A DNA stretch of 64,000 nt. It comes from Takakia lepidozioides. Lineage: Eukaryota > Plantae > Bryophyta. The position numbers and the translations under genes were made by a program. Shown in pieces: positions 8,285 to 41,240 of the stretch. The notes beneath the pieces were generated by a model. That model made no database searches. It was given only the letters and a program-made list of their open reading frames with translations, and was not told the DNA's origin. Positions within the stretch are counted from its first letter, which is position 1. Each line of letters starts with the position of its first letter. Location of the stretch: NCBI GenBank assembly GCA_030704615.1, contig CM060734.1, positions 59,954,001 to 60,018,000 of the forward strand, in the 5' to 3' direction.

Positions 8285-9554
8285 TCTGTGCTCATCTAGT
8301 AGATTCCTTGAATTTTGATACAAAGTAGCAAAAGCCATTGTGAAGGATTTTTGACAGAATCAACTGTGATGTATTATTTATGTGGTCGAGTGTTGAATTT
8401 TTGTAAGGATACTATCCCACAACAAGCTGAAGTCTGCTATAGATCTATCTGAAGTCACAGCCATGGAGGAGATACCCCCAAGCTCAAGAATCAAGTAAAT
8501 AGCTATGCTGTGCAGGGCATTCAAATGAAGAGGTGGCTGCCCACTATGCACAGGTGAGTTTACCCGTCTGGGATATAGCATCAAACTTACATGTTATTGG
8601 GCACAATGTTGAAGGTGGGAAAATATAGATTGCAAATAGTGAACTGGTAGTGGTAAGCATTGAAAAGATCTAGACCAAAGAAGCTGGGATTGCACATTAA
8701 TATGGAAGGTGGGGGAAAATAGCTGACAGATAGTGAACCAGAGGTGCCGGAAAGCATTGAAATGACTAAACTTCTTTACTTATGCGCAGATGAAGATAGG
8801 ATTGCCCGGTAATGTTGCATGCACATTGAAATAAAAGTTGGCCCCATTGTACTGTGATGAAGTAAACTGCACCCAGGGTCTACGGCCACATGATTGCGAA
8901 CTCCAATTTCAATTTGTGAGGAAGACTGCAGATGCCACAATCCCGCCCAGATAATGTTTTTGAAGTATCTTCATTCAAACTAGGCCAAAAACTGTGATAT
9001 CTTTAACAACATACTCACCAGCTGCCATGCATTTCTGCTTAGATATTCAGTAAGAATAGTCGACCTTCAAGCCAATATGGCAAGCATCCCTGCCAGTCAC
9101 TTCTGACAAGAATGCAGAACTGGTGAAGCACAGGAGCAGCAAGTCGCTGCAGCCTCGCGAAGACTGAACCGTAACTTTGTGCACAGGCTAAGCTCACAAT
9201 ATGCTCGCCTCAGACAAAAGTAATACCAGACCCAACCAAGGCCTGCCCTTCCTCTGATGAAAACAGCCATGTCTAGTAGCTCTCTGAGAGAGTGGTAATA
9301 CCAGACAGTTGAGAGACAGTCTCAAGTATGCATTAGCAGTCTACTTCAGAGCTAACTGCAAACCAGCCCCCTCTGATGATGGGCCCAAATCGCCTCCATC
9401 TGCTTACGAAACCCAACCTGGAGAATGTTAGAGCTTTGTATGCAAGCCTGCAATAATCAAGGAGTTTCTTACAGATAATGATGTGCCACAAACAGTAACA
9501 AGCCTTGGCTTGAGCAGGGCAGCCATTCTTTTATTGGCGATTTATCGCCAAATT

Positions 9555-9696
9555 TTGACCTTGCATAGGTCCTGACGACAGGGGTTAAGGGAAATGAGGT
9601 TAAATCTGATCTGGTGGGCCCATCTTGACCTCGCATAGGTCCTGTCGACAGGGGTTAAGGGAAATGAGGTTAAATCTGATCTGGTGGGCCCATCTT
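9555..9696. repeat. Tandem duplication, 2 x 70 bp
   Basis: TTGACCTYGCATAGGTCCTGWCGACAGGGGTTAAGGGAAATGAGGTTAAATCTGATCTGGTGGGCCCATC occurs twice head-to-tail with 2 mismatches. Confidence 0.9.
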
Positions 9697-9949
9697 TCGC
9701 CAGAGGGTCTGCAAGAGGGAGCCACCTGTTGCCATTCTGGAGGGAGGGCCGTTAGAACAGAGAGTCCAGATCCTATATTATTGCCATTTATTTCGAGTCT
9801 GCACTTTGTATCATCGCAATACATGCTCCAATTAGGTTCTCATGGATGTCACTCGCGCCACAATGTAAATAGCTTAAGAGAAACGTTGCAGCAGGGTGCC
9901 TTTCAAGCAGAATATTGTCCGGTTGTTGATTGACCTGTGTATGGGCTGA

Positions 9950-15884: not shown

Positions 15885-17498
15885 TCTCCCTTCCTCCTCC
15901 TCCAATGTCTTTTGCCTAGTGCAACTTAAAACCTTGTGCCTAGATGGGTACTCTGATCAACACCGACAGACAAATCATGATTCATCTCCATGCGGAGAAC
16001 TTGAGAGCGACACACCATATTGCAGGGCTTCCACCCTGCATAATGCAACCCAACATTCAGTGCCCTATCCTCTGCATTGCAATTGAGGTCATCACAAAAG
16101 GACTGTGGAGATAGGGCAGAAAGTATCTACCACAAAATAAGGAGAGGGAGAGATAGAGTTCACAATAGAGCTCAGGGAGTCACGACCCGGGGTGTTTCAA
16201 GCATGGCTGATTCAAGCGGAGGAAGTCGCAGAGTCTACTGCTAATTTTCGAAATCGACCAAGTTGTTGGGTGTTGTTTACGTCCAACATTCCCACTCTAA
16301 GTGTGACAGTGATGGTTGGGTAACCACATTCACGCGCCACCGCATACCAGCATTCAAAGTCACAGCCGATAGAGAACCCGAACGGCACAAACCAAACATA
16401 CCCCAGCCAGTAATTTCAAGATCCTGGATCTCACCATGTTTACTCCAAAGGAAAGAATCTTCAAAAGCCGCATCTTACCTCAACTTGTCCCTGCTCCTTC
16501 AGCCTTAATTCCTCATCTCCTCCACAGATGACGGGCGACTGAGTGACAGCAATGGAATCTGTCTAACGATCCTCACCTCCCTCCACACCGTCTTGCACAC
16601 ACAATGCGAGGCCGCCTTCTATATGAATCCCTCCCCCTCAGCCCTCTACTTACTCAGGTAACAGTGCCACAGACTGAGGCCCCGGAATTGTACACAGATC
16701 CGCAACCCCGAAAAAATGTGCCCTCTCCTCTCACCATGGATTGCACAGAACTCTACTTCTTCAACTCCTGTGCAAGAATGCAGCAAAAGAAAGGTGCTCT
16801 TCCATCAAACGCTTCACAGATCCCAGAACTCTCGCACTGCAATCAACCCCCTGCACTCAAAATTTCCTCGTAACATTTCCTTTGCCCTTCCAATTCTTCG
16901 TTCGTTGCCGAATCTGTCCTTCACCCCCGCACGCACGCGCAAGAAACCGCCCTCCGAAACTTCGGCCTGCAAAACGCACGCCGCTTTTCTGTAACTAGGG
17001 TTAACTTCTGCGTAGATACATGGGCGCGGCCCTTTCCCGCGCAACAAAACATATTTCTATATTTATTTGAATATTTCATGTAACCGCAAGGCCCATGTAC
17101 CCCTGGCAGGGTGGATATCCGTGACGCACCGGAAATATCTATTGCAGCGGTATATATGGATGGATGGATTGTACGATGTCCTGGTTACGAAAGTAAAGGT
17201 AACGGATGATGGAGTACGATAGAGGATGATAAACATCTTCATCCACGATAAAGGCCAGGAAACCAGCGCGGGGTGAGGGTGCGCTAACCAGGGTTAGATC
17301 TTATCCTGGCGGGCGCGATCCCATTTGTCCAAGTCGTGATAGCGCGCATGAGGCAGCCTGCGCTTCTCTTTCTCACTCTTCTCTTCTCTGTCGCCGCCAT
17401 CGCTCATCGATCTCTCTCACTCTTGTCTAGTGATTGCTGTGATTGCTGTGATTGCTGTGGAGGCATTGCAATTGCATTCGGTGCGAGGAAGAGGAGAA

Positions 17499-18802
17499 AT
17501 GGCGGCGGTAGCGTGTAGCAGTGTGTTTTCGGTGCAGTGTGCTGCGGGGCAGAGGCAGAGTGGGAAGAAGGCCGTTGCTTGTCCGACATTCGAGGGCCTT
17601 TCAAGTCGCTCGCTTGCTCTGAGAAGAACAGAATCCGTCGACCTTAATGCCGAGCTGGAGAGCAAGAGGCCCGAAAGCCGGTCTACTACAGTGTGTGCGC
17701 TCAAGGACCTGAGGGATCGCATTCAGACCGTCAAGAACACTCAGAAGATTACTGATGCCATGAAGCTGGTGGCTGCTGCCAAGGTGCGGAGGGCGCAAGA
17801 GGCTGTGGTGAACGGTCGGCCTTTCTCAGAGAACCTTGTGAAGGTTCTGTTTAACGTCAACGCGCAGCTGCAGAATGAGGACATCGACATCCCTTTGACT
17901 CAAGTAAGCTGCTTTCCGCGACATTGCACTAAATTTGGAGTTGATTCTTTCCATTCGGCGTCAGTGTGAGAGTGTGCGAGCATTTACCTCTTCTTCAACC
18001 TCGCTGACAACTAGATACCCTTTTGGAACGTTACTTGCAGATAAGGCCCGTGAAGAAAATTGCTTTGGTAGTTATCACGGGCGACCGAGGCCTCTGCGGA
18101 GGATTCAACAACTATGTCCTCAAGAAGGCCGAGGAGCGGATGAGACAGTTGAGGGCGATTGGTGTAGAGTATACAGTTGTCAGCATTGGAAAGAAGGGAA
18201 ACAGCTATTTTAAGAGAAGGGAATATATCCCTGTTGACAGGTTTCTTGACGCCGGAAGCGCTCCAACCACTTCGGAAGCTCAAGCTATAGCTGATGAGCT
18301 CTTTTCTTTGTTCGTGAGTGAGGACGTGGACAAGGTGGAGCTGCTGTACACCAGATTCCTGTCTCTAATAAAGGCAGATCCTGTTATTCACACCCTCCTC
18401 CCTTTGTCTCCTCAAGGAGAGGTCTGTGATATCAATGGAAACTGTGTGGATGCTGCCGACGACGAGATGTTCAGGTTGACCACCAAGGAGGGCAAGTTCA
18501 CTGTGGAGGTGGACACCACAAGGACTGAGACACCTGAGTTCACAGGAGTTCTTCAGTTTGAGCAAGAGCCTGTGCAAATATTGGATGCGTTGTTGCCTTT
18601 GTACCTTAACAGTCAGATTCTTCGAGCCTTGCAAGAGTCAATTGCCAGTGAGCTGGCTGCTCGTATGAATGCTATGAGTAACGCCAGTGAAAATGCTTCG
18701 GATTTGAAGAAGTCTCTCTCCACCTCTTACAACAGACAACGCCAAGCTAAGATTACTGGAGAGATTTTGGAAATTGTTGCAGGCTCCAATGTTACAGTCT
18801 AA
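17499..18802 (+). CDS. atpC: Chloroplast ATP synthase gamma subunit with transit peptide; exons 17499-17903 and 18041-18802
   Basis: [45 protein letters not shown], redox-regulatory [26 protein letters not shown]; one GT-AG intron. Confidence 0.97.
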
Positions 18803-27496: not shown

Positions 27497-28844
27497 TTTT
27501 AACGATCACGCTCTCCTTCCTGCAAAAAGAAGCTTCCGCCTATGAGAATGACCGAAAGAGGAAGCCTCAAAAGCCCCTTTGAAACAAAATGAAGAAGGAT
27601 CCAACGACCAAAATCTAAAACACGCGGGTCCTTTCTCGGATGTCATGTACTAATTGTAAAGCAAAAACACAATCTGTCATCAAAACATCACACCTCAGAA
27701 AAAGACGTGGTTCCTTCCTGCAAACGCTTGAGAGACAGAAGCAAGGGTGAGATGAGACAGAGGACAGAGACGACAACTTGAAATAAGCAGAATAAGTTGA
27801 GTGAAGCAGGCCATGGAGATCTCATACCTAGCACGGTGCGATCGGGGTTGAGAATCGTCGATCGATCCAGAGCAACACGGATGGCGGGCACGCTTCCTTC
27901 TTGTTCGCGAGAGCGACGGGCGGGGACACCCATGAGCACGACGGGCCGTCCAATGCACCGTCGACGGCGACCGTTGTGAGTATCCGGGACCCAGGACGGC
28001 CTTTCCAGGCCACCGGAACACGCATACCCACCTGAATTGTCTAGAGCTCCGATTTGGTAATTACCTTGAACATATTATTTTGGTATGCACGTACTAAACT
28101 GAATCATTCAACTCTTTGCCGCCTTCAGCAAATCCTGGGGAAAAGATTTTGTGTTCTGCAGGAGAATTGATGACACTAGTATTAGAGTTATCCGTAAAGT
28201 GAGCCTGAGTTTGGTACCCTGTTTGGACCCCATTTACGGGTTTCATCCTGAGTTTGAGTTAATCCGTAAAGTGCAGAGCACGAAGTCAGAAAAGAGGGCA
28301 CCAAATCATAAATTGGGGATGAGGGCAACCGTTGCTATGGCGCGAGCTCGTGAGCTCTGACCACCTCCGCCTCGACGACTAACAAAACTCGGCACCAAAC
28401 TCCTGCCACCCCCATTTTCCTAGTTTGGTCCCGTGTTTTTTTTTAGTCGTACCGCTTGATCCTGAGTACCCGTCTATGCGGAGGCACTCGCAGCAAGCAT
28501 GTCCGTTCATGGCACCCACAGTCCAACCATCGACGGCCGTGGTAGAAGACGTGGTGTTGGGGCCGGAATCTTTGTGGATGACATAGCACATGAGGTCGAT
28601 TCTGATTCTGATGACTGTGACACTTGATATCAAGTTTTCTTTTACTTTTATTCGGGGCCAATTTTGAAATGGGATGGTTGTGTGTCTTTGTTGTCATGTT
28701 TGCAATGTGTGCATTGGATGCAAATTCCTGGGAACAAACTATCGTTGGAGATGGGGGTTGCATGGACTGCCCGGATTGTTCCTTCAATCTCTTTGGTTTG
28801 GGCAGTGCATTCTCGCATCATTTGATGTTGGTCTCCAAACCATT

Positions 28845-29010
28845 TGTCGTGCGCATACATATCGCTACACAACTACATCGCTGTCCAAAACCACACAACA
28901 CATGTGCACACCACACACTAGTATACCACTAGTCCAACCACTAGGCTACAACTAGTCAGTCACTAGGCTGCCACTATGTTGCCCACTATGGCAGTCACTA
29001 GTTCACACAA
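28845..29010 (-). repeat. LTR segment A (terminal copy, element 3' end)
   Basis: Direct repeat of 29340-29528 with a few substitutions; the internal copy carries about 23 extra bp of CCACTAGTCC units. Confidence 0.93.
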
Positions 29011-29337
29011 TGATAAAGAAGAAGAATACAAGCACAAGCTCATGCGAGCTCACAAAGCTGAAGCATAAACTCAGGCATATATAACCTCATCACTCAAATA
29101 CAAGTCAAGCCAAGTGCACCCCACGCCATGGGGAATCCACACTACGGCGCCATAGCTAGGCGCGGTGAGGCTCAACTCGAGAAAGATGAGCCTCCTGCAC
29201 TTGCCGTGAAGATAACCACTCCAGGGCCTAAATCTGCCTTGACCCCTGGATTGACACTTGGGCCAATCCCAAATGTCAATATGTGAAAGCTAGCTATTTC
29301 CTAGCTAGTTTCACACTAGTGGTAAAATAACTTGACA
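29011..29337 (-). repeat. LTR segment B (3' copy)
   Basis: TGATAAAG...CTTGACA; direct repeat of 40699-41024 with about 5 substitutions and 1 indel counted by eye. Confidence 0.95.
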
Positions 29338-29339
29338 GC

Positions 29340-29528
29340 TGTCGTGCGCATACATATCGCTACACAACTACATCGCTGTTCAAAACCACACAACACATGT
29401 GCACACCACACACTAGTATATCACTAGTCCACCACTAGTCCAGCCACTAGTCCAACCACTAGGCTACAACTAGTCAGTCACTAGGCTGCCACTATGCTGC
29501 CCACTATGGCAGTCACTAGTTCACACAA
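29340..29528 (-). repeat. LTR segment A' (internal copy, directly after the polypurine tract)
   Basis: Repeat of 28845-29010, joined to B through the dinucleotide GC (29338-29339) inside the palindrome GACAGCTGTC. Confidence 0.93.
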
Positions 29529-29538
29529 TCGCCCCCCT
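29529..29538 (-). other. Putative polypurine tract (plus-strand primer)
   Basis: Minus strand reads AGGGGGGCGA immediately before TTGTGTGAAC, the start of A'. Confidence 0.6.
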
Positions 29539-29787
29539 AGCTGGTGCTTAGGTCCCTATAAGTCCAGGTAGCCACAAGATGTGATAGTGACCATAGCCTC
29601 ACTAAGTCCTCCACCACTATCCCTACTACACTCAAACTCGATAGATCAAGAGGCCGGGTGCAAGAGTTGCCCCATCGTTAGTCGCCGTCCTGCAACCTGT
29701 GAACTTGAGCTTGGGATCTCATGTATTGACTCATATGAGCTTGGCCTCCCATGTCTTGTTAGCTGCCTCCAGTCATGTCCACTGCCA

Positions 29788-31464
29788 CTATCCCAAGCAG
29801 TGTGGACACAACCAATCTCCGTCAGGAACCTTCTCAAGAGGTGGTGTCAAGCATCCCATATGCCAACCCCTTGAGCATCGATCACACACCAGCATGGTGG
29901 TTGCCCCTTTGGCAGACCCATAGAGCATGCACCTCAAACCTGCAAGTACCACTGCCAAGTTTGGGTCAACTCTGCCATCGACATTGTGAAGGTGACATGG
30001 CGCACAATTACGCACATGGTCCTTCCAAGTCATGCCATCCCGACCCTCTAAGATCAGGACCCCTGAGGGCAACACCTCTCGAACCCTCAGAATAACACGC
30101 CCTGCAGTAACATCCAGAGTCGTAGGAGCAGTCTGCTGCAAATAAACATAGTCACCAGGGCTAAACCTCCGAACCCCAGGACGATATCCTCCACCACGTA
30201 TAGTGGCATACCTCAACGTATCACGGTGTTGTGCAATGGCAAGGTTTTCAAAAGCCATGGGCATGACTTTCTTGAACAACTCTGCACGCTGATCACATGC
30301 ACGTACCCACACGTCCGGATCGTCAAGGTTAAGGACTTGAGCAGTGTCCCTACGAATGGCTGCAGGCAAATCCGGCTCTCGGCCAAAGAGAAGGAAATAT
30401 GGTGAGAAGGAGGCAAGTGATGCTTGTTTGCTGAACCTGTAGCCCATGGCTAACCAAGGAACCTGAAGATCCCAATCTCCTAGGTGTCCCTTCTGCAAGC
30501 CATACTTGCGCAAACCCCTCTTCACCGTCTGAACAACTCTCTCTGCTAAGCCATCGGCCTCAGGATGATCCCGAGAAGTGGTGTGGTGGTCTATCAAGGC
30601 TTTATCACACAAAGCCTGAAACTCCCCCAAAAACTCTCTCCCTTGGTCCGTGAGTACCTCAGCTGGAGCACCAAATCGGCTAAGCACACGATCCAAGAAT
30701 GCATACGCAGCCCCCTCACTAGCCTTGTCAGGCAATGGAACCAACTCAATCCACTTGGAGAAGTGCTTCACCATCACCAACACATATCTGTGGTGGCGCA
30801 TAGTCAGTGGCAACGGTCCTGCGAAGTCAAGACTCCACCTGTAGCCCAATCCCATGATTGGTAAAGGATGCAACTGTGGTGTAGGGGCGTTGAATGAAGC
30901 ACGCACCCTGTCACACACCATGCACCTAGCCACGAACTGTTGCACCTCTGTATGCATACCACGCCACCAATACTGCCCCTGCAATAAACTGTGAGTGCGT
31001 CGCACTCCAAAATGCCCCAACTCCTCATGGGCATGCCGCACTAACCGTGCACGCTGTGTGGGGTGAGGCACAATCCTCACCCGACCATCCTCCCACACTC
31101 GAAGTAGGTGTATCCCCTCCCACTTGAACCTCTTGGCTCGTTGCAGGATCCGATCCCTCTCCCTGGCAGTCACAGTGACTGCCGTGTCTCCCGTGCGGAG
31201 GTAGTCCAACACAGCCGAATCCTCGTGTATATCTCTGGCACCACCTGGCTCATCACTAGCCTCAGGGTCCTCAGACACTCCGTCTACAGTCATCCCTGTT
31301 GTAGGTCCAACCTGACCTCCCGATGCCAAGATACACAAAAATGCAGATGCGTGCCATCTCGGTACCATCTCCTCGTCCGTCTCACCATGCCACCGAGCTC
31401 CTGTGTCATCCTGCTGGCTCATGCATGGATTGCGACTCAATCCATCCGCATCCCGATTGACCAA
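29788..31464 (-). CDS. Retrotransposon DDE integrase with a C-terminal PHD finger (PHD about 29791-29931)
   Basis: HHCC (HAHEELGHFG...CMVC); D-D-E core (WSLDFAG, LTDQGREF, DGLAERVV); C-terminal CMLY...LVCDRCSRGWHMGCLTPPLEKVPDGDWLCPHC fits the C4HC3 PHD pattern with the second Cys replaced by Tyr. Confidence 0.92.
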   Translation of the reverse strand: MVNRDADGLSRNPCMSQQDDTGARWHGETDEEMVPRWHASAFLCILASGGQVGPTTGMTVDGVSEDPEASDEPGGARDIHEDSAVLDYLRTGDTAVTVTARERDRILQRAKRFKWEGIHLLRVWEDGRVRIVPHPTQRARLVRHAHEELGHFGVRRTHSLLQGQYWWRGMHTEVQQFVARCMVCDRVRASFNAPTPQLHPLPIMGLGYRWSLDFAGPLPLTMRHHRYVLVMVKHFSKWIELVPLPDKASEGAAYAFLDRVLSRFGAPAEVLTDQGREFLGEFQALCDKALIDHHTTSRDHPEADGLAERVVQTVKRGLRKYGLQKGHLGDWDLQVPWLAMGYRFSKQASLASFSPYFLLFGREPDLPAAIRRDTAQVLNLDDPDVWVRACDQRAELFKKVMPMAFENLAIAQHRDTLRYATIRGGGYRPGVRRFSPGDYVYLQQTAPTTLDVTAGRVILRVREVLPSGVLILEGRDGMTWKDHVRNCAPCHLHNVDGRVDPNLAVVLAGLRCMLYGSAKGATTMLVCDRCSRGWHMGCLTPPLEKVPDGDWLCPHCLG

Positions 31465-32750
31465 ACCGGTCGATGCACAACCTGAAAGTCATACTCCTGG
31501 AGTATGAGTGCCCACCGTGCAAGCTTCCCCGTAAGCTTGTCTGACTCCATCAACCACTTGAGTGGCTGGTGATCCGTGACAAGGGTGAAAAGATTGTCGT
31601 ATAGATAGCACCTGAAGTGTGCCACGGCCCACACTGCAGCTAAGCACTCTCCCTCATATGAGCTGTACTTAGCCTCCGCAGCGTTGTTCGAGCGGCTAGC
31701 ATAAGCCACTACGAACTCTCTTCCCTCATCATCCACCTGTGTGAGCACCGCTCCTGCTCCAATCCATATGCAAGCTGAAAGGGACGCCCCCTGATAGGTC
31801 GTCTCAGGATAGGCGCCGAGGTCAACCTCGCCTTGAGCTCTTGAAAAGCTCGTTCCTGCTCATCTTCCCACTGCCACTCCTGGTCCACCTTGGTCAGCTT
31901 GGTTAGAGCTTTTGCAATGGTACTAAATCCCTTGACAAACCGTCTATAATAGTTTGCCAACCCCATGAAAGCTCGAACTCGGCTCACATCCGTGGGGTGG
32001 AATTTGTGCAATGGCCTCTACCTTAGTCTGCTGTACCCCCAATCCTCCAGGATATATCATGTGACCCAGATACTCAATCTGGTTGTGGAAAAACTTGCAC
32101 TTCCCCGGATGCAACTTCAATCCGTGCGCTCTCAAGCGCTCCAATACCACCTGAAGGTGTCTCTCATGCTCCTCCATCGTAACACTAAAGATGATGATGT
32201 CATCTATGTAGCACCGAGCAAAGTCCACCCCTGCTAGAATCCTATCCATGACTCTCTGAAACTCTGCAGGAGCATTCTTAAGCCCAAATGGTAAGAACCG
32301 CCACTGATATAGGCAATCCTTGCCGTGCTCATTGATCCCCCAGAATGTCGTCTTCTGCTTGTCCGCCTCCTTGATTGGCAACTGGTGATATCCGGATCGT
32401 AAATCCAAAGTGCTAAAGGCCTTAGCATGCCCGATGGCATCAAAGATCTCCTCTGGTGTTGGCATGGCATACTTATCGGACTTGGTCTGACGATTTACAG
32501 GCCGGTAATCACCGCACATACGTCTCTCCGTCCAATTGCCATAGACATCCTTCTTGGCTGGCATCACTGTGGCTGAAGCATACTCTCCACCAGAGAGCTC
32601 CACCAAACCTGCCTCCCAGAGATCTTGAGTCCTCATCTGAATCAAAGACCTCTCCATGTCACTGTATCTATAGGGTCTCCGAAAGATTGGCGTGTCAGTG
32701 GCCAACTCAATACGGATCTCTTGACCCTTCAGTGCTCCCAAGTCCTTCAA
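31437..32750 (-). pseudogene. Gypsy reverse transcriptase and RNase H, split by frameshifts
   Basis: RMCGDYRPVN, STLDLRSGYHQ, LPFGLKNAPAEFQ, YIDDIII, YLGH; then VRAFMGLANYYRRFVKGF, VAYASR, YSSYEGECLA, VTDHQPL in successive frames. Confidence 0.93.
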
Positions 32751-33199
32751 ACTGAAGGCAAAGCAATTCCTGTAAGCCCTCAGGAACCGCCGTATACGTC
32801 GTCTCTCTTCTCCGGTGACAATGGGTCCAATGTCAGGCTCCCAATTGTCCTCCGTAACTGCAACCTTAAGTCCAGTGGGCTTAGAGGTAGAGGACGCGTC
32901 CAGTGGTTGCTATGTTGCAACCTCTTGAGCAGTACTCCATCCCTGCTCAGTCAATGACAAGGCCTCATCCTGCCCCATCATCTCATCCTTGAGGACCTCC
33001 TCAACCCGAGAAGAATCCCCAACCTCATCCATCACAGCCGCTTGGCTGCCAACTCCCTCTGAACCTCGAGCACCTCCCACGTGTGCCATGGATGCATGCA
33101 CCCCGTGGTCCTCACATGCTCGCCCCCACTCACTGCCTGTACCGTCTCGGTAGGCAGAGAGACCATTGAGGGAAGTGTACTCCGCACTCTGCGTTGCTC

Positions 33200-34160
33200 A
33201 GCCAAAGCCAAGCTGATAATCCAGGTCAAGCAATTGAGATCCATTGCTTGCCCCAACACTTGACGACGTGATGCCTCAGAAAGAGACGACACCGCCGTGG
33301 TACCAGTGGTAAAACCCATTGCCCGCTCACGCTCGTCAGCATTAGGCTCCACTAACTGCTGCAACTGAGCATCCCACAGGAGGCCAGGTCCACTATCCCG
33401 GAAAGCATGCGATCCTGGGAAGCTGAGCAGTGTAGGTAATGCTGCTCGTGGTTGACCCACCTTGTTGACCACTGCCAAAGGCGAACGGTCATCGTGTCTC
33501 ACACGCTGAGACTGCCTCCTGTGTCCAGAATGTTATCCACTGTGAGATGTGCTGGCCGCTGCACCCCATCAAATGCACGCTTGAGCAGTGCGGGTGGCAT
33601 CAAGTTAGTCCACCATAGCCGTGGACGATGAGCCCGTGACCCACTGTAGCTGCATCTAGCAACACTGCTGACCCAAGCCACGACCGGACTTGATGCACAC
33701 TGGCCATCACCCTGGCCCGAGAATCGCCCATCAGTGGCACATTCTCCAAGATGTATGCTGGAGATACAGCTTGATGAAGCTGCAAGTGGCGCAAAACCCG
33801 CACCATCTCCCAAAACAGACCCGACCTCGAGTCTCGCAATCCATTGCCATGCCCGGCTGATGAATGCCCTTGGCAGGGCCAACCTGCCACTACCAGATCA
33901 ATGGAGCCAACCCGCTCCAAATCCTGCGCCCCCAGCAACGAAATGTCTGCTGGCAAGGCCTGCTGATATCCACGAATTGCAGACACCGACAACAACTCAG
34001 GGTACCGCTGCACCAACTGAGCAACATGGCGAAGTGAAACGCGTCGTGCAGTCTCATCCCTCTCCACATACAGGTAACGCCGAACTCGTACACCTGCCTG
34101 TAACACAGCAGCCAATCCGGTGCTGATCCCGCCAAACAAGTCCAGAAGACAAATGCCTTC
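33200..34160 (-). pseudogene. DNMT3-like C5 cytosine DNA methyltransferase domain embedded in the retrotransposon pol region (frameshifted twice)
   Basis: Ordered C5-MTase motifs: I LLDLFGGISTG, II YVERDE, IV IDLVVAGWPCQGHS (catalytic PC), V RSGLFWE, VI ILENVP, VIII LDAATVG/SRAHRPRLWWTNL, IX ERERAMGF, X RRQVLGQAM, across ORFs 33600-34325, 33499-33882 and 33032-33502. Confidence 0.93.
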
Positions 34161-34279
34161 ATCCGGATACTGCCACACAATAGGTGTGGTGTCCAATGGA
34201 GACAATTGAGGTGGTCCTGGTGCAATCCCCACACTCTCCTCCTCTCCTGACGGTACAAAAGCCTCCACCCAGGCTTGTT

Positions 34280-37087
34280 GCACCCGTCGATCAGCATCCG
34301 CTGCAAATCCTTGCTCGTGCCCCACAATGGAGTCTGAGCAACCATGGTAGGCAACTCCGCCATACCATACATGTCATCCTGCTCTCCCGGAGGTGGTACA
34401 TCCTCTGAATGAGCGTTGCCCTCAAGCAACTCTCTAGGCCAACTCACTGCCGCTGTGAATGCTGCTAGTGTCGGCATCTTGCCTCGCTGGGCAACCGCAA
34501 CTCCTCCTATGAACGTCACAGGGAGCTGCACACGCCGGCCCTCCCCTGACTGCCATGCAGGCCTATAGGAAGCTGACTCCTCCCAAAAATCCAGGGTGAA
34601 GCCCATGGGGTACAACACTGCCCCACCAACCAGGACATCGTATGAGACCGCGTCTGTCACAATGGCCTTGGCTCGCATCACTGAGCCATCTGTAGGGTGA
34701 TCCGGCCGTAGTCTGATAGCCAACTCACGCCGTGTCATGCCCCGAGCCTGCTCCGATCCTCCCAGAGACGTCTGTATCTGGAAAGGACAAGGCTCCATAT
34801 CCGCCTCCGTGAGGCCCAAGCCTGCAATAGCAGCTCTGCCCAGCATCAATGGCTGAGCTCCCGAGTCCAACAAGACCCGCAGTGGCCGGTACCTCTTGCC
34901 TGCCGGTCCACTCAAACAGAAAATGCCATCCTGGTTGTCTAACATGACAACTCCAGGTGTCACCATGGCGCGCTCAATGGCTGGCCTAGCTGGCAGCTCC
35001 ATCAACCTGGCAGCTGCAGCTTGCCATGGCGCCGCCGTGGCAGTCTTGACCCTCAAATCCGAGGATCCCTCCGGCACTACACCTCCCACTATCTCCGCAG
35101 AAGATGAAGTAACCTCCCCACTCTCACAGAGTGTAGCTGCCAGCCTGAACACCTCAGCTGGTCTTACCCCCGGCGTCGCAATCATGGTAGCCGAGAACAA
35201 TGGAGCCTGGCACACAGATGTGGCCGCTCCTAGCAGCACACTAGCTGCCGTAGCCTTGGCAACACTAGGTAGTGGTGCTACCCGTGTAGCTCTCCCCAAT
35301 GGCATAGTAACCTCCGCCTCGGTAACAGTCGGGCGAGAACTAGGTGCCATGGATGGCGTCGACACTGTCTCCGCCAATGTGAATGACTGAGGAAGCCTAG
35401 CCTGACGGCTTGCCTCCCCACGCTGTGGATCCAACTCCACCTCTGCACCTCGTGGCTCAGGAACTCGTGCTGCTCCTCGAGTCACGGCTGCAGCAGACTC
35501 CACCTGCACTAGTGGTAGTGCTGCTCCACACATGAATCCCATGCCTCCCATATCTCCTCCCTCAGGAGCAGGAGGTGGACCATCCGGCCTTAGAGCCGGT
35601 ACCACCTGAGCTGTAGCCATGGCAGCGAGCCTCTGCTCTAGCTGCTGAAGCCGGTTGGCCATGCCTTGGTCAACACCCTGACCTCCGCGTCCTTGGCCAT
35701 GTTGAGCTTGCCCTTGGCCTGCACCTCGTGGCTGGCCACCTCGTCCTCTCTGGGCTGCTCCACCTCGCCCCCGGCCACCATTGTTCCCTTGGAACTGGCC
35801 TGGGCGCAACTCAGGATGCAAACCATAACACTGGGCCTCTCCATGCCCGTGCTTGCCACAATGCCCACACTGCAACTGTGCAGGCTGTGCATGTGCCGGC
35901 CCTTTGCCTCCCTCTGGGCAATCCTTCTTGACATGGGGTCCTCCACATGTCCAGCACACCACATCCGCCCGTTGTTGGCCAGCAAATGAAGGGAGAGACC
36001 CCTGCATCTGAGGTCCTCTCTGCCCTTCCCTGAGCTTCACCTGAGCCCCCTTGTTGCCTTGAGCACGTTGAGGTAGTGGTTGGCTAGGAGCACCACTACC
36101 CCGTGGTGTCTCCTTAGCAAATCCCACCATGACCACTCGTTCCTCCACCATGTTGAGCTCTATCCGCTCTGCCAGCAAAAACACATTTGCTAAGGTGGGT
36201 TGGGCCGCTTGTAGGAGAGTTGCATCCCGCACCCTTCTCCTCAGCTCCTTGTCCAATATCCCATACCAGAATTGGACTGCCTGAGCTTCCGTAACCCCTT
36301 GGGTTACATTTATCAAGCGCCTCATGCGAGTGAAAGCCTCCCTCAAGCTCTCGGTCGGCTTCCGTTGGAACTCTTGCAAGCTCCGCAACTTCTCTGTCCT
36401 CACCCCTTGGTAGTTCCCTCTCAACTCTTCGAAGAACTCCACAACAGGGTTGAAGGCAGGCACGGGTACTAGTGCTGGTGCGGTAGTGGCTTGGGTGGAC
36501 GTCGTAGCTACTGTACCACCAGTCCCACTAGTCCCACTGCTACTTGCTGAAGCTGCCGGTGCAGCGGCAGGTGTAGCCACTGCCCTCGTGGCTCTAGTGC
36601 CCCTAGTGATGGAGACATAGTCGGGTGACCAGTACATCCTCCACTCCTCGATCTCAACCTCATGCCCCCGCCTGAACTCATGGTAATCATCCATAGGCGG
36701 CCCCTCAAGGTGCTGAAACAGCCCTTTCCATGCCATGAAAGGCGTAAATAGTTGTGGATTGCGCATTTGCTGCAAATCACACCAACTATCAAACTCTTGG
36801 ATAAAATCATCCAACTCGATGGTGCCCACCGCCCCAGAGTACCTTCGTGGCCCCTTGGTAGCTCCATACATCTCCTCCATTGTGTCCCACAACAATGGCA
36901 AAGAAACAACTTGCACCGCCGGTATGAGTCCTCCTGATTCACAATCCGAATCAGAACCTTCCGTAGAAGACACAGGAGGTGAAGGTGGCCTAAACCGCAC
37001 ACCTCGTCTCGTGTACCCACTAGTATCGCTAGTGCTCGAACCGGCACTGTCCCCAGCAACTAGTGGCACCTCCGTGTTGACACTCAA
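34280..37087 (-). CDS. Retrotransposon Gag (two CCHC zinc knuckles) and aspartic protease
   Basis: Gag-like LRSLQEFQRKPTESLREAF; knuckles CWTCGGPHVKKDC and CGHCGKHGHGEAQC; protease VLLDSGAQ...DVLVGGAVL. The ORF track starts at 37087 and the first ATG is at 36880. The frame shifts into the DNMT frame near 34280. Confidence 0.88.
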
Positions 37088-37739
37088 CCGGTCATGAACA
37101 TGTCCCTAACCCCCTCTCCACAAGGTAACCGGGTAGAGAACCTGTTGCGGCTTATGGTTTGGAATACTAAGTTCCTAACATAGCCTACACCTGTACCTGC
37201 ATCCACCGCAAGCACTCCTATGGTTGGCTGGTCATCACCTCCAACCTCACCACAGGAGAAACAATGATGGTCTGGCTGGTCATCACCCCAGCCTCACCAT
37301 CGACAGCATGCTCTAGGACTGGCCGGTGATCAAATCCGGACCAATCACCTATAAAAACAAGCGCCCACACAAAACTAGCATGGCGCACAGTCAAGCATGC
37401 AGGTATGGAGGGGATCCAAACACAAGAAATCAGAACGACAACTCCCCCACACCAAAAACAACTCCACGGTGTTGCTCCTGCAAGGACACCCCAGCCCAAA
37501 CCCGGACTGACTCTTGCCTCCACCTACGGAAAGGTCTTGGCCTAATGAGAGGGTGGAAACTACGAGGAAGAGAAGCTAAAGCAATGCCTAACCCCAGCAT
37601 GCCCTCATCCCAACACTCTTCCTCTCCTCTCTTCCCTCACTTGCATGACCATGGGAATATCATGAAGATACTCCTCAAACCGCCCTCCACGAGCTTCAAA
37701 ATTCGGCCTTCAGACCACATGCCAGTCCTTAGGCAGTCC

Positions 37740-39170
37740 ACCAGTGCCTCCACGAGTCAGCACAGGCCGTCCACAGGTCAACACGGGCCACCACAGACCA
37801 GCACAGGCCACACAGCTCACTGGTCACAGCCGTCACAGTCCCACAGGCCACTGGGCACAGCCTGTCACACAGCCCCTCACAGCCCCAAAGGCCTCAGCAC
37901 GGCCTGACCCACAGCCCTCACACACAGCCCTCACACACCGCCCCAAAGGCCTCAGGCACGGCTGTACACAGCCCCTCACTCAGCAACCCCTCACAGCCCC
38001 ACAGCCACTGGGCCCCACAACACCACAGCACACAGCCCGTCACAGCCCCACAGGCCACTGGCACAGCCTGTCACACACTCCCCTCCACTCCCTTCACACC
38101 CACCTTTCACAGCCCCCACAGGCCACTGGCACAGCCTTCACCCCATCACACCACGCCCCTCACTCACAGCCCCAAGGCCACGGGCACACAGCCTGTCACA
38201 CAAGCCCCCAAAGCCCTCACAGCCCCACAGGCCACAGGCACGGCCTGTCACAACAGCCCCCACAGCCCACTCACAGCCCCCCACACAACCCACACACCCG
38301 TCCCAACACACAGCCACATCACCCCACACACTCCCACCACAGCCAAAGCCCCACACGGCCTGTCACAGCCCCCTCACACAGCCCGTCACAGCCCCAAGGC
38401 CTCAAGCACGGCCTGTCACAGCCCTCACAGCACCTCAAGCCCATCACAGCCCAAAGGCCATGGGCACAGCCCCTCACAGCAGCCCCTCACAGCCCCACAG
38501 CCACTGGGCACAACCTGTCACAGCCCGCACACCCGTCACAGCCCCACAGGCCACGGCACAGCCTGTCACAGCCCCGCACCCGCACAGCCGTCACAGCCCG
38601 TCACAGCCCCACAGCCACTGGGCACACATCCTTTCACAGCCCCGCACAGCCCGTCACACAGCCCACAGGCCACTGGGCACAGCCCGTCACAGCCCCACAG
38701 GCCACTGGGCACAACAGCCTGTCACAGCCCCTCACACCCCAAGGCCACGGCACAGCCTGTCACAGCCCTCACAGCCCCAAAGGCCTCAGGCACGGCCTGT
38801 CACACAAGCCCACACCCCACAGGCCACTGGGCACACCTTCCAGCCTCGCACAACCCGTCACAGCCCCACAGGCCACTGGCACCGTCTTGGCACAGCTCGC
38901 ACAGCCCGTCACAGCCCAACAGGCCACTGGGCACAGCCCTCTCACAGCCTATCACAGCCCCGCACAGCCCCACAGGCCACTGGCACAGCCCGTCATCCCC
39001 ACAGCCACTGGGCACAGCCTGTCACAGCCCGTCACAGCCCCACAGGCCACTAGGCACGGCCTGTCACAGCCCCTCACAGCCCCTCACACCCCCAAAGCCT
39101 CAGGCACGGCCTGTCACCCAGCCCCTCACAGCTCACACAGCCTCAGTCAGCCCTTCACACATGCCCCACT
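37740..39170. repeat. About 1.4-kb degenerate minisatellite (CACAGCCC / CACAGGCCACTGGG / CACGGCCTGT units) in the retrotransposon 5' leader
   Basis: Dozens of visible CACAGCC(C) units with extreme C/A strand skew. Confidence 0.9.
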
Positions 39171-39649
39171 CCATGGCCGCTCTGGCAGTTTAGCCATTTC
39201 TCCAAGGGTTTAGCCACGCCAAGCTAGGGTTTGTGTCTCTTGGACTCTAGGCTTCTTTCCACCGAACTATGGTGGCTGTGAGGAAATCAGCAAGGTATTC
39301 TTGCTCTTTCGGCTCCCACACACCACCATAGTAGCCCTAAGCCATGAGGTGGTTGCCACAAACCAAGCCTTCTTTCTCACTTAGCCTCCCCAAACACGCA
39401 CTAAACTCATGGCAAACAACCAAGCCCTGCTGGTTCCCAGCCCTTGTGAGCACTCATTCAAGCACTCTCCTTGGCCATAGCATCTGTCTTAGAGCCTATT
39501 CCAGCTCCCTACACCGCTGCTTCAAGAGTTGCGCTCCCTTCAAGCTTGAAGTTGAAACCCCAACCCCAACTCACATAGGCCCTACAAGTGCTTTTCTTTC
39601 ACTCCAAGTGGAAACCAGCCCTAGACCTTCCGTTCTAGCTCTCTAAAGC

Positions 39650-39990
39650 TTGAAAACAAGAGCCTCAATGGGCTGAAGGCATGCTCCACACATGCCCCAC
39701 CATAAGAGAATCAGCTCCTTTGCTTCATTTCTTGCACCCACAAACCTGAAAATACAAGCTTCAGCAGGCTGAAAGCATGCTCCACATGCCCTACAGGGAA
39801 ACCAGCCCCTTCCTTCCTTTCTTGCACTCCCACACCTGAAAGTGCAAGCCTTCACCAGGCTGATAGCATGCTCACACATGCATTGCCCTCACATAAGGGA
39901 AGTTAGCCCTTCCCTCTTCCTTACTTGCCCTCCAAGCTTGAAGATGGAAGCTTCAATGAGCTGAATACATGCTCCACACATGCAACCTCT
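39650..39990. repeat. Degenerate tandem repeat, about 4 copies with roughly 95-bp period, in the retrotransposon leader
   Basis: A GCTGAA..CATGCTCCACACATG-like motif recurs near 39672, 39768, 39859 and 39960. Confidence 0.6.
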
Positions 39991-40682
39991 TCACACAAGA
40001 GATATCAGCCCCCTATCTTGGCTCCTTGGCTCCTTGATGCTCTCTAAGACAAGACTAAGCACTCCACAGCCTTTGCCAAGCTCCTGAAACCCTAAGGCTT
40101 ACATTTCCAGCCACAAGACACTTCTCTTGTGGTGCAAGAGCTCTTCTTCCAAGCTCTGAAACCCTAGGTGCACATTCCATGGCCTTGCCGCACCTCTTAG
40201 CTCCTGTTCCAGCCCTGCTCTTGCCATGCCAAAAGCCCTCTCAATGCTGAAGCTCGAGATTGAAACCCAATCTCACCATACTCCACAAAGTGCACTGATT
40301 TGCCCCAAGCCAAATCAGCCCTTTCGCTTGGTCTTGCAATCTTTCACACAATGAAAGCTCGCATTCCCAAGTCCAGTTCTCAGCTTTGCCACCAAAGCCA
40401 CTATAACCTGCTCTTGACTGGTCTTCTTCCCAATCGTGCTTGCTCATGCATGTACACAATCTGAAACCATCAAGGTGCTCTGGAATTACCTGCAGCATGG
40501 TGCTTTCATCTCTGAAGCTGAAGATCGCATGCCAAGGTTTACCACCTCGTAACTCACATCGCCTCCGCTTCTAACAACCAAGAGCTCCACGGTGCTCCTT
40601 GCATAACAACCTGGTTTCTCTCATTCTCAAGCAAAAACCACAAGTGCTACAACTAACTCGTATTTGATACTCACAGATACGA

Positions 40683-40698
40683 GCTCATCTTTCTCGAG
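40683..40698 (-). other. Putative self-priming primer-binding site
   Basis: Abuts the inner end of B' and is the exact 16-nt reverse complement of 40864-40879 inside the same LTR. It does not begin with the TGG of a tRNA PBS. Confidence 0.7.
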
Positions 40699-41024
40699 TG
40701 ATAAAGAAGAAGAATACAAGCACAAACTCATGCGAGCTCACAAAGCTGAAGCATAAACTCAGGCATATATAACCTCATCACTCAGATACAAGTAAAGCCA
40801 AGTGCACCCCACGCCATGGGGAATCCACACTACGGCGCCATAGCTAGGCGCGGTGAGGCTCAACTCGAGAAAGATGAGCCTCCTGCCCTTGCCGTGAAGA
40901 TAACCACTCCAGGGCCTAAATCGGCCTTGACCCCTGGATTGACACTTGGGCCAATCCCAAATGTCAATATGTGAAAGCTAGCTATTTCCTAGCTAGTTTC
41001 ACACTAGTGGTAAATAACTTGACA
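40699..41024 (-). repeat. LTR segment B' (element 5' end)
   Basis: Direct repeat of 29011-29337; not accompanied by an A segment on its outer side. Confidence 0.95.
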
Positions 41025-41240
41025 CATTCCTGCCAGAAGAATGCTTGGTAAATCCATCGCATTGAAGTCCACGTGATCAAAGATCGTTCAGGCATTCTTC
41101 TGGTGAGCATCCATGATGCTCCCGCACATACCATACATGTTCGCAAGGGTGGTGAGTAAGAAAATATTTCGCAGGGATCCGCTTTGGATGATGTGAGTGT
41201 GCACCTGCTCACGACGTAGGCACATTCCAATGCAAGGGCT
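41025..41240 (-). pseudogene. PLS-type PPR gene fragment at the retrotransposon insertion site
   Basis: VHTHIIQSGSLRNIFLLTTLANMYGMCGSIMDAH...RMPER is a degenerate PPR motif. The other flank (28800-28844, minus) reads NGLETNI..NAL, also PPR-like. Confidence 0.6.

What the first reader, a model, noticed from the sequence alone, without database searches (positions are those of the whole stretch)
28841..41028. Candidate novel system: a self-priming gypsy retrotransposon carrying its own chromatin writer (DNMT3-like) and reader (PHD), with permuted LTRs
Seen in one TSD-bounded element: gag-PR-[C5 DNMT]-RT-RH-IN-[PHD], a PBS complementary to its own LTR, a 3.6-kb repeat-filled leader and split LTRs. 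Established: DNMT-carrying retrotransposons were reported in dinoflagellates and a charophyte alga (de Mendoza et al. 2018, recalled from memory); I am not aware of this full combination in a land plant. Inference: the polyprotein would package a de novo methyltransferase with the cDNA and a histone-tail reader on integrase. That pairing parallels animal DNMT3 plus its PHD-like ADD domain, and could let the element pre-methylate its own DNA or its insertion site. LTR copies differ by only about 2% (counted by eye), so intact relatives may exist.
Basis: partly seen in the sequence, partly recalled or inferred. Interest (0 to 1): 0.95.

Follow-up and report, generated by a model that had tools for sequence, protein, structure and literature searches.

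The report
Methyltransferase-carrying gypsy retrotransposon in a bryophyte
This is a real but broken 12-kb copy of a jumping gene in a moss-like plant that encodes its own DNA-methylating enzyme and a histone-reading finger. The same kind of element was described in a green alga in 2018, so the finding extends a known kind to land plants and does not found a new one.

Summary
Window 28845-41024 (minus strand) is one Ty3/gypsy element with 4-bp target duplications. Its order is gag(CCHC)-PR-DNMT-RT-RNaseH-IN-PHD. The primer site is complementary to the element's own repeat, the leader is 3.6 kb and repeat-filled, and the terminal repeats are split (X ... Y-X-Y).

The host is a bryophyte. The element belongs to the lineage published as KnitGypsy-Dnmt3 in the alga Klebsormidium nitens, which has a DNMT3-like domain in Pol and DIRS-like repeats. 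Related copies with the same order, repeats, polypurine tract and ends occur in Calypogeia, Riccia and Sphagnum. A Klebsormidium scaffold carries the same end-to-end palindrome (CGACA-GC-TGTCA). PHD-bearing gypsy elements are already known in Chlamydomonas. Self-methylation of cDNA was already proposed.

DNMT and PHD are integral to the family: they are in frame in relatives, dN is far below dS, catalytic residues are invariant, and the predicted fold matches DNMT3A. This copy is dead, with about seven frame breaks and a lost PHD zinc ligand.

Three points appear to be new. The family is present in land plants. It has two domain orders. The integrated form looks like a 2-LTR circle opened at an internal palindrome. 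Verdict: new member of a known kind, moderate interest.

The parts
28841..28844 (.). Target-site duplication, 3' side of the element (CATT on the + strand)
   Evidence: Four relatives also have 4-bp duplications at the homologous ends.
28845..29010 (-). Y2, the terminal copy of repeat Y. The element's 3' end reads ...GCGCACGACA in sense.
   Evidence: The last 24 nt are identical in the Riccia copy.
29011..29337 (-). X2, the 3' copy of repeat X (327 bp). The X2|Y2 border is a blunt join of X end to Y start.
29338..29339 (-). The 2-nt GC spacer in the Y1|X2 junction. The junction forms the palindrome GACAGCTGTC, which is the two integrated ends joined head to head.
   Evidence: The same junction is in K. 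nitens L005, L007 and L009 and Riccia L011.
29340..29529 (-). Y1, the internal copy of repeat Y (190 bp; it has a 23-bp indel relative to Y2)
29530..29538 (-). Polypurine tract (sense AGGGGGGCG), directly 5' of Y1
   Evidence: It is conserved in L002, L003, L011 and L012, and is similar in K. nitens.
29797..29928 (-). PHD finger at the integrase C-terminus. The second zinc ligand is Tyr in this copy.
   Evidence: Pfam PF00628, E = 5.7e-9. PDB matches. Alignment.
30562..31062 (-). Integrase: H2C2 zinc domain and DDE (rve) core
31440..32011 (-). RNase H, split over two or three frames
32055..32525 (-). Reverse transcriptase (RVT_1)
   Evidence: E = 9e-34.
33227..34160 (-). C5 DNA methyltransferase domain, DNMT3-like, with motifs I, IV (PCQ), VI (ENV), VIII, IX and X. 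It is broken by frame changes near 33640 and 33520.
33890..37087 (-). gag-PR ORF (1065 aa) with two CCHC knuckles and DSG protease. It is out of frame with the DNMT in this copy (break near 34253-34295).
37106..40682 (-). Non-coding leader with tandem repeats (37746-39167 C-rich on the + strand; 39610-40011 ~90-96-bp units)
40683..40698 (-). Primer-binding site for self-priming, adjacent to X1
40864..40879 (-). Segment of X1 complementary to the primer site. It is the inferred 5' end of the transcript and the self-primer.
   Evidence: A compensatory change between two Calypogeia copies is shown.
40699..41024 (-). X1, the 5' copy of repeat X (326 bp). The element's 5' end reads TGTCAAG... in sense.
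41025..41028 (.). Target-site duplication, 5' side (CATT on the + strand)

Best explanation
Identity. This is a decayed copy of a Ty3/gypsy retrotransposon of the 'Gypsy-DNMT3' lineage of green plants, inserted in a bryophyte genome.

Shown about the family:
- It encodes one gag-pol polyprotein with a DNMT3-like cytosine methyltransferase between protease and RT, and a PHD finger on the end of a DDE integrase.
- Its repeats are X - leader - ORF - PPT - Y - X - Y.
- Integration made a 4-bp target duplication at ends TGTC...GACA.
- DNMT and PHD are conserved under purifying selection.
- This copy is inactive.

Inferred about replication:
- The transcript starts about 146 nt into X.
- Its 5' end folds back on the site next to X and primes minus-strand synthesis, as in Tf1.
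- With the polypurine tract lying before Y, reverse transcription would give a DNA with Y-X long terminal repeats.
- The ends of that DNA are joined (the X|Y border).
- The integrase then opens the molecule at the internal Y|X palindrome. This would yield the permuted form seen in the genome.

Inferred with low certainty about function:
- The methyltransferase travels in the particle and methylates the new DNA or the insertion site.
- The PHD steers the integrase to nucleosomes whose H3 tail is unmodified.
For: Domains and order.

Same order, with DNMT in frame with PR:
- Calypogeia fissa (L002 and L012).
- Sphagnum troendelagicum (L003).
- Riccia (L011).
- An intact 2327-aa polyprotein, P0492.

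Host: bryophyte. The ATP synthase gamma exon is 87-90% identical to mosses and 82-85% to liverworts.

DNMT:
- Best PDB sequence hits are DNMT3A/B/C (E = 1e-13 with a profile).
- An AlphaFold model (pLDDT 93) matches DNMT3A with TM 0.84. All top 50 hits are DNMT3.
- The catalytic Cys, ENV and RxR motifs are invariant in 42 domains.
- dN is about 0.2 against dS above 2, like RT and IN.

PHD: best hits are CHD4, KDM5A/B PHD1, ATXR5, BHC80 and AIRE.

Repeats, ends, duplications and polypurine tract are conserved in the window, L002, L003, L011 and L012.

The palindrome CGACA-GC-TGTCA is also present in K. nitens and in two distant relatives.

The X2|Y2 border equals the blunt join of the ends predicted from the primer site and the polypurine tract in three species.

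Self-priming:
- 16/16 nt complementary in the window.
- The 5' end pairs with the primer site in the minimum-energy folds of three species.
- A compensatory change separates L002 and L012.

Published precedents:
- KnitGypsy-Dnmt3.
- Integrases cutting palindromic LTR-LTR junctions (PMC1905944, PMC1180852).
- Self-priming in moss Tcn1 elements (PMC6317226).
Against: - No K. nitens sequence containing the DNMT could be fetched. The link to KnitGypsy-Dnmt3 therefore rests on the paper's description, on a K. nitens IN-PHD scaffold with the same 3' structure, and on IN similarity of 51-57%.
- No transcript start, polyadenylation site, extrachromosomal DNA or methylation data were available. The replication route and both accessory functions are inference.
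- A circle with two identical palindromes should open at either one. Yet every 3' end seen has the same order (PPT-Y-X), which the simple circle model does not explain. One possible reason is that the other product cannot replicate.
- CpG observed/expected in the element (0.45-0.54) equals that of the flanks (0.43-0.53). There is therefore no element-specific mark of self-methylation.
- The PHD lacks the acidic residues before its first Cys that some H3K4me0 readers use. Its specificity is open.
Confidence: 0.8

Rival explanations
1. It is a new, land-plant-specific system assembled independently of the algal DNMT retroelements.
For: I found no paper describing such elements in bryophytes. The survey of plant LTR elements lists no PHD or methyltransferase lineage. 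The PR-DNMT-RT order is the minority order in the databases.
Against: The DNMT of the other order (RT-RH-DNMT-IN-PHD) is 38% identical, E = 2e-61, with the same unusual motif X. The bryophyte integrases form a clade with 99% SH-aLRT support (quick tree), nested among those elements. K. nitens shares the polypurine tract, the Y repeat and the palindrome. The 2018 paper describes the same repeat layout. A chlorophyte (Scenedesmus) pol carries the same DNMT.
Confidence: 0.08
2. It is a one-off chimera: a host DNMT3 or PHD gene fragment or a nested insertion inside an ordinary gypsy element, or an assembly error.
For: This copy has many frame breaks around the DNMT, and its repeats look irregular.
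Against: The same order and in-frame fusion are found in four other bryophyte loci from independent assemblies and in intact 2100-2800-aa polyproteins. dN is far below dS. The repeat layout and duplications are reproduced in other species.
Confidence: 0.02
3. It is an ordinary LTR element whose repeats were rearranged after insertion, by unequal recombination or partial duplication. On this view the permuted layout has no role in replication.
For: Copy L012 has lost X2 and one Y while keeping its duplication. Recombination between repeats therefore does occur.
Against: The layout, the conserved polypurine tract before Y1, the palindrome and the exact X|Y border recur in the window, L002, L003, L011, L007 and K. 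nitens. Target duplications flank X-start and Y-end, not the ends of a Y-X repeat.
Confidence: 0.05
4. The accessory domains act otherwise than proposed. The DNMT might methylate RNA, or host DNA in trans, or merely bind DNA. The PHD might serve particle assembly or nuclear import, not site choice.
For: No functional data exist. CpG depletion does not single out the element. The 2018 paper found one retroelement DNMT inactive on DNA in yeast and raised RNA methylation as a possibility. Most relatives have EC instead of PC at motif IV.
Against: The DNMT3-like fold, invariant catalytic residues and strong constraint point to an active enzyme. A retroelement DNMT3 methylated CG de novo in the 2018 study. 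Chlamydomonas Gypsy-7a with a PHD inserts in intergenic DNA 2.6 times more often than expected.
Confidence: 0.3

Closest known systems
KnitGypsy-Dnmt3 of Klebsormidium nitens (de Mendoza et al. 2018, PMC5890265)
   Same: It is a Ty3/gypsy element with an intronless, unrearranged DNMT3-like domain inside Pol, repeats laid out as in DIRS elements, a poorly conserved motif X, and purifying selection on the DNMT. A K. nitens IN-PHD scaffold has the same polypurine tract, Y repeat and CGACA-GC-TGTCA junction.
   Different: The host here is a bryophyte, not a charophyte alga. The integrase is about 51-57% identical. I could not verify the position of the DNMT in the algal polyprotein. The PHD, self-priming, duplications and junction logic are not mentioned in the text of that paper.
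Chlamydomonas Gypsy-7a_cRei (Craig et al. 2022, PMC9940879)
   Same: It is a gypsy element of the green lineage with a PHD finger in Pol, and its LTRs are drawn as 'subparts'. It is active and biased to intergenic sites.
   Different: No DNMT is reported. The paper's legend lists PHD between RH and INT, whereas here it follows the integrase. I did not compare sequences directly.
Type-B relatives (RT-RH-DNMT-IN-PHD), e.g. 'pol' of Scenedesmus sp. PABB004 and many metagenome contigs
   Same: They share the same DNMT family, the same IN-PHD, and in two of three loci the same palindromic junction.
   Different: The DNMT sits between RNase H and integrase. gag is a separate ORF. Motif IV is mostly EC, not PC.
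Tf1/sushi and plant Tcn1 chromoviruses (self-priming gypsy elements)
   Same: There is no tRNA primer site. The 5' end of the transcript is complementary to the site next to the 5' repeat.
   Different: Those elements have ordinary LTRs and a chromodomain, no PHD and no DNMT. I did not test RT relatedness.
DIRS order: PAT and Ngaro elements with split direct repeats; TOC1 of Chlamydomonas
   Same: The repeat layout is A1 ... B1-A2-B2, with an internal copy of the joined ends. This comparison is from my own knowledge and from the legend quoted.
   Different: Those elements use a tyrosine recombinase and make no target duplication. This one has a DDE integrase and 4-bp duplications.
Animal DNMT3 with its ADD domain
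   Same: A DNMT3-type catalytic fold is paired with a zinc finger of the class that reads an unmodified H3 tail.
   Different: Here the two domains are 1300 residues apart, on parts that the protease would normally separate (inferred). The finger is a plain PHD, not an ADD. The resemblance is functional at most.

Membership tests
Ty3/gypsy (Metaviridae) LTR retrotransposon | Pol order PR-RT-RH-IN with a DDE integrase | tested here: met
   Pfam RVT_1, RT_RNaseH, Integrase_H2C2 and rve lie in that order on the minus strand. PR has only a weak hit plus a DSG motif.
Ty3/gypsy (Metaviridae) LTR retrotransposon | Identical long terminal repeats at both ends, TG...CA termini, and a short target duplication | tested here: inconclusive
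   TG...CA termini and a 4-bp duplication are present. The repeats are permuted (X ... Y-X-Y), so there is not one LTR at each end.
Gypsy-DNMT3 (KnitGypsy-Dnmt3 type) | An unrearranged DNMT3-like domain within the Pol ORF, without introns | tested here: met
   DNMT is in frame with PR and RT in L002, L003, L012 and P0492. Motif order is I-IV-VI-VIII-IX-X. The best sequence and fold matches are DNMT3A/B/C.
Gypsy-DNMT3 (KnitGypsy-Dnmt3 type) | DIRS-like arrangement of the repeats | tested here: met
   The 3' part is also seen in K. nitens L005.
Gypsy-DNMT3 (KnitGypsy-Dnmt3 type) | Purifying selection on the DNMT | tested here: met
   dN is 0.20-0.21 against saturated dS, like RT and IN. Catalytic residues are invariant.
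Gypsy-DNMT3 (KnitGypsy-Dnmt3 type) | Groups with K. nitens DNMT-bearing copies in a tree | not tested
There is indirect support only.
Self-priming elements (Tf1/sushi type) | Primer site adjacent to U5 and complementary to the start of the transcript; no tRNA match | tested here: inconclusive
   Complementarity, adjacency, folds and one compensatory change are shown. The transcript start itself is not known.
DIRS order | Tyrosine recombinase; no target duplication | tested here: not met
   There is a DDE integrase and a 4-bp duplication. No recombinase hit appeared in any ORF scanned.
Chromoviruses | Chromodomain at the integrase C-terminus | tested here: not met
   The C-terminus is a PHD finger and no chromodomain hit was found.
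H3K4me0-reading PHD fingers | Eight zinc ligands and binding of an unmodified H3 tail | tested here: inconclusive
   The closest solved fingers are of that class. Ligands are conserved in relatives, but the second is Tyr in this copy. Binding cannot be tested here.

The most novel reading that the evidence does not exclude
A widespread green-lineage branch of Ty3/gypsy elements replicates through a permuted route. Self-primed reverse transcription makes a DNA with Y-X repeats, and its ends are joined. The DDE integrase then opens the molecule at a conserved internal palindrome that mimics an LTR-LTR circle junction. On this reading a circle or end-joined form is an obligatory integration intermediate. 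It would be the integrase counterpart of DIRS replication, in elements that also carry a DNA methyltransferase and a histone reader.
Probability: 0.3. Interest if true: 0.75.

Novelty: new member of a known kind. Interest (0 to 1): 0.5.

Why it matters
- **Host range.** Retroelements that carry a de novo DNA methyltransferase are not confined to one alga. They occur in mosses and liverworts and, in a second domain order, in chlorophytes and many environmental sequences: 295 cluster representatives at E <= 1e-30. This gives tractable land-plant systems with methylome and transformation tools in which to ask what a transposon gains from methylating DNA.
- **Annotation.** Some 'DNMT' or 'PHD' gene models in bryophyte annotations are remnants of this family.
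- **Mechanism.** The family has conserved permuted repeats, a DDE integrase, clean target duplications and a deeply conserved end-to-end palindrome. This makes an old question directly testable: can an integrase use a circle-junction-like site as its normal substrate?

Tried and rejected
I searched the ORF pieces separately and used naturally intact relatives instead.
- **tRNA primer.** ARAGORN finds no tRNA gene in the window, and the primer site does not begin with TGG.
- **Extra ORFs in the leader.** There are none in the window. The 5.2-kb leader of L002 is inflated by a nested LINE fragment.
- **CpG depletion as a mark of self-methylation.** The element does not differ from its flanks.
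- **Sequencing error as the cause of the frame breaks.** The four break contexts I printed are not homopolymer runs, so they are probably real. This is unproven.
- **Naming the organisms behind the long DNMT polyproteins.** Three look-ups gave one name, Scenedesmus. No K. nitens DNMT protein was recovered.
- **Terminal repeats in other contigs.** L010 (the intact P0492 contig) shows no terminal repeats, no palindrome and no PHD. L007 lacks a 5' X copy. L008 shows no palindrome.
- **Integrase tree.** The careful search did not finish. Only the quick tree is reported.
- **Bacterial promoter/terminator scan of the repeat.** It is uninformative for a eukaryote.


Full report
**What is there.** The coding strand is the minus strand. 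Reading 41024 down to 28845, the element holds the following parts.
- Repeat X1 (326 bp).
- A 16-nt site complementary to X itself.
- A 3.6-kb non-coding leader full of degenerate tandem repeats.
- A 1065-aa gag-PR ORF with two CCHC knuckles and a DSG protease motif.
- A C5 DNA methyltransferase domain, then RT, RNase H and integrase (H2C2 + rve) ending in a PHD finger.
- A polypurine tract, then the repeats Y1, X2 and Y2.

X1 and X2 differ by five substitutions and one indel (98.2%). The ends read TGTCA...CGACA in sense and are flanked by a 4-bp duplication, CATT on the + strand. No tRNA gene or tRNA-type primer site is present.

**State of this copy.** The copy is dead. The reading frame changes near 34253-34295, 33640, 33520, between 33191 and 32897, twice or three times in 31950-31760, and at 31467. 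The second zinc ligand of the PHD is Tyr, where ten relatives have Cys. The four break contexts I printed are not homopolymer runs. I built no corrected or consensus version. All protein searches used the natural ORF pieces or intact relatives.

**Host.** An exon of chloroplast ATP synthase gamma at 18023-18802 was searched alone and by reference. It is 89-90% identical to Sphagnum, 87% to Ceratodon and Physcomitrium, 85% to Calypogeia and 82% to Marchantia. The window comes from a bryophyte, most likely a moss not represented in the protein collection.

**It is a family, not a chimera.** The DNMT piece finds about a hundred proteins at up to 74% identity. They include Calypogeia fissa, Marchantia polymorpha and two Sphagnum species. 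I fetched the loci.
- *Calypogeia L002 and L012, Sphagnum L003 and Riccia L011.* These have the same order, with the DNMT in the same frame as PR and RT. L011 is 5'-truncated and starts within the DNMT. A PHD is seen in L002, L003, L011 and L012.
- *JGI metagenome contig L001.* It shows gag-PR-DNMT-RT-RH before the contig ends.
- *Selection.* Between the window and L002 or L003, dN of the DNMT is 0.20-0.21 with saturated dS. That compares with 0.15-0.17 for RT and 0.12-0.14 for IN. The PHD has dN 0.19-0.24.
- *Conserved residues.* In an alignment of 42 domains the catalytic Cys, ENV, the RxR arginines and the motif I glycines are invariant or nearly so.

**What the accessory domains are.**
- *DNMT.* The DNMT profile hits DNMT3A (E = 1e-13), 3B and 3C first among solved structures. 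Tobacco DRM, bacterial enzymes and DNMT2 follow. An AlphaFold model of the intact relative P0001 (pLDDT 93.4, pTM 0.91) matches DNMT3A-DNA complexes with target-normalised TM 0.84. All fifty best matches are DNMT3.
- *PHD.* It is closest to CHD4, KDM5A/B PHD1, ATXR5, PHF21A, DPF, UHRF1 and AIRE. From my own knowledge, these fingers read an H3 tail unmethylated at K4 or R2. The specificity here is untested.

**How it compares with what is published.**
- De Mendoza et al. 2018 described KnitGypsy-Dnmt3 in Klebsormidium nitens. It has unrearranged, intronless DNMT3 domains inside the Pol of a gypsy element, Ka/Ks below 0.2, a poorly conserved motif X, and repeats 'the same as that of a DIRS retrotransposon'. 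The authors proposed self-methylation of the cDNA.
- A 2026 preprint refers to this as 'streptophytes (Gypsy-DNMT3)'.
- I found no paper reporting such elements in bryophytes.
- The reference survey of plant LTR elements lists no PHD or methyltransferase lineage.
- PHD fingers in gypsy polyproteins are documented in Chlamydomonas Gypsy-7a_cRei, which is active and biased to intergenic sites.

**Link to the alga.** The integrase-PHD ORF finds KFL_015960010 of K. nitens (51% identity) as well as Volvox, Pleodorina, Riccia, Marchantia, Sphagnum fallax and Calypogeia. The 3.8-kb K. nitens scaffold shows, after the PHD, TTAGGGGGGGAG, then a ~135-nt Y, then CACGACA-GC-TGTCAGG. That is the junction found in the window. 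The nearest proteins to the algal integrase have RNase H directly before the integrase, as in the window's order. I could not retrieve a K. nitens protein containing the DNMT, so shared ancestry of the DNMT with the algal copies is inferred, not shown.

**A wider family with two orders.** A profile search of 1.84 billion representatives gives 5894 hits, 295 of them at E <= 1e-30. Many lie inside polyproteins of 1000-3400 aa.
- *Type A.* This is gag-PR-DNMT-RT-RH-IN, as in the window, the bryophyte loci and P0357/P0492.
- *Type B.* This is RT-RH-DNMT-IN-PHD with a separate gag. It is the majority type and includes 'pol' of Scenedesmus sp..
- *Relationship.* The DNMTs of the two types are 38% identical (E = 2e-61). 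In a quick integrase tree the window, Calypogeia and type A form a clade (SH-aLRT 99) nested among type B. The careful search did not finish.

**The permuted repeats.**
- *Complete copies.* The window, L002 and L003 all have X1 ... PPT-Y1-(2 to 4 nt)-X2-Y2, ends TGTCA...GACA and 4-bp duplications: AATG, AATG and ATTC in sense.
- *Riccia L011.* It has the same 3' part, and its last 24 nt of Y are identical to the window's.
- *L012.* It has X-int-Y with duplication CCCC. This is explained most simply by recombination between Y1 and Y2.
- *Junction J1.* Y-end, GC, X-start is the two integrated ends joined. It forms GACAGCTGTC. It recurs in K. nitens and in type-B loci L007 and L009.
- *Junction J2.* X-end|Y-start is, in three species, the exact blunt join of the base before the primer site to the base after the polypurine tract.

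The primer site and polypurine tract thus define a Y-X repeat, whereas the integrase ends define X...Y. The genome copy looks like a 2-LTR circle opened at J1. Retroviral integrases can cut palindromic LTR-LTR junctions (PMC1905944, PMC1180852). This route is my inference. It does not by itself explain why all six 3' ends seen have the same order. One possibility is that the mirror product cannot replicate.

**Self-priming.**
- *Window.* The 16 nt after X1 pair perfectly with X positions 146-161 (0 of 500 shuffles reach this). An RNA starting there folds with its 5' end on that site (z = -5.0).
- *Relatives.* The same closing helix appears in L002 (z = -2.5) and L003 (z = -2.3) with different sequences.
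- *Covariation.* Two Calypogeia copies differ by a compensatory pair: AGTTCTCCAAG/CTTGGAGAACT against AGTTCTCTAAG/CTTAGAGAACT.

This matches the Tf1 mechanism, which has also been predicted for moss Tcn1 elements. The transcript start itself is not known.

**Function.** What is shown is conservation, constraint and fold. That the enzyme methylates the element's DNA, and that the PHD guides integration, remain hypotheses that others have already voiced. CpG observed/expected is 0.45-0.54 in the element and 0.43-0.53 in the flanks, so composition gives no support either way. The parallel with DNMT3-ADD is loose. The two domains sit on different mature proteins if the polyprotein is cut in the usual way.

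**Verdict.** This is a new, inactive member of a known kind, and it extends Gypsy-DNMT3 elements to land plants. The permuted-repeat logic, conserved across the green lineage, is the part most worth an experiment.

Noticed in passing
window 12788-14215 (-): A 475-aa ORF with a reverse transcriptase domain (RVT_1, E = 2.4e-29). It is a LINE-like element unrelated to the finding.
   Followed up: no
window 17430-17969 and 18023-18802 (+): Two exons of a chloroplast ATP synthase gamma gene. The second exon was used to place the host among bryophytes. The exons were not joined.
   Followed up: partly
window 57575-60067 (+): An 830-aa ORF with no Pfam hit. Nearby, a 304-aa ORF at 54934-55848 (-) has a weak Cyclase hit.
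   Followed up: no
L004 (Marchantia polymorpha LVLJ01001344.1) 9830-11272; proteins P0032, P0086, P0138: Marchantia gene models annotated as hypothetical proteins are fragments of this family. One holds the PR end plus DNMT only. Another (Mp_7g09570) holds the integrase tail plus PHD. They are either remnants or possibly co-opted pieces.
   Followed up: partly
L012 (Calypogeia fissa CBCUJL010000007.1) 1701-11420: This copy has the form X-internal-Y with a 4-bp duplication CCCC. It lacks X2 and one Y. The cause is either recombination between the two Y copies or direct integration of a molecule cut at both palindromes.
   Followed up: partly
L002 2016-2208 versus L012 1855-2055: A compensatory change in the self-primer/primer-site pair separates two copies in one genome. 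In both, X also holds a local hairpin whose upstream arm repeats the primer-site sequence.
   Followed up: yes
L008 (JGI Ga0392395_0003459) and L009 (ENA NODE_1090): Metagenome contigs of type-B elements assemble as tandems or cycles, with periods of 11,535 and 15,252 bp. This is expected from collapsed repeats but is also compatible with circular or tandem DNA.
   Followed up: no
P0161: An integrase-PHD protein with a DNMT fragment is labelled as coming from a Spirochaetia metagenome bin. It is probably eukaryotic contamination of that bin.
   Followed up: no
alignment A4: Most type-B methyltransferase domains have Glu-Cys instead of the canonical Pro-Cys at catalytic motif IV. The bryophyte type-A domains keep Pro-Cys.
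   Followed up: no
L002 2570-4612: A LINE fragment (RVT_1 plus zf-RVT) is nested in the leader of the Calypogeia copy. It accounts for that copy's 5.2-kb leader.
   Followed up: yes
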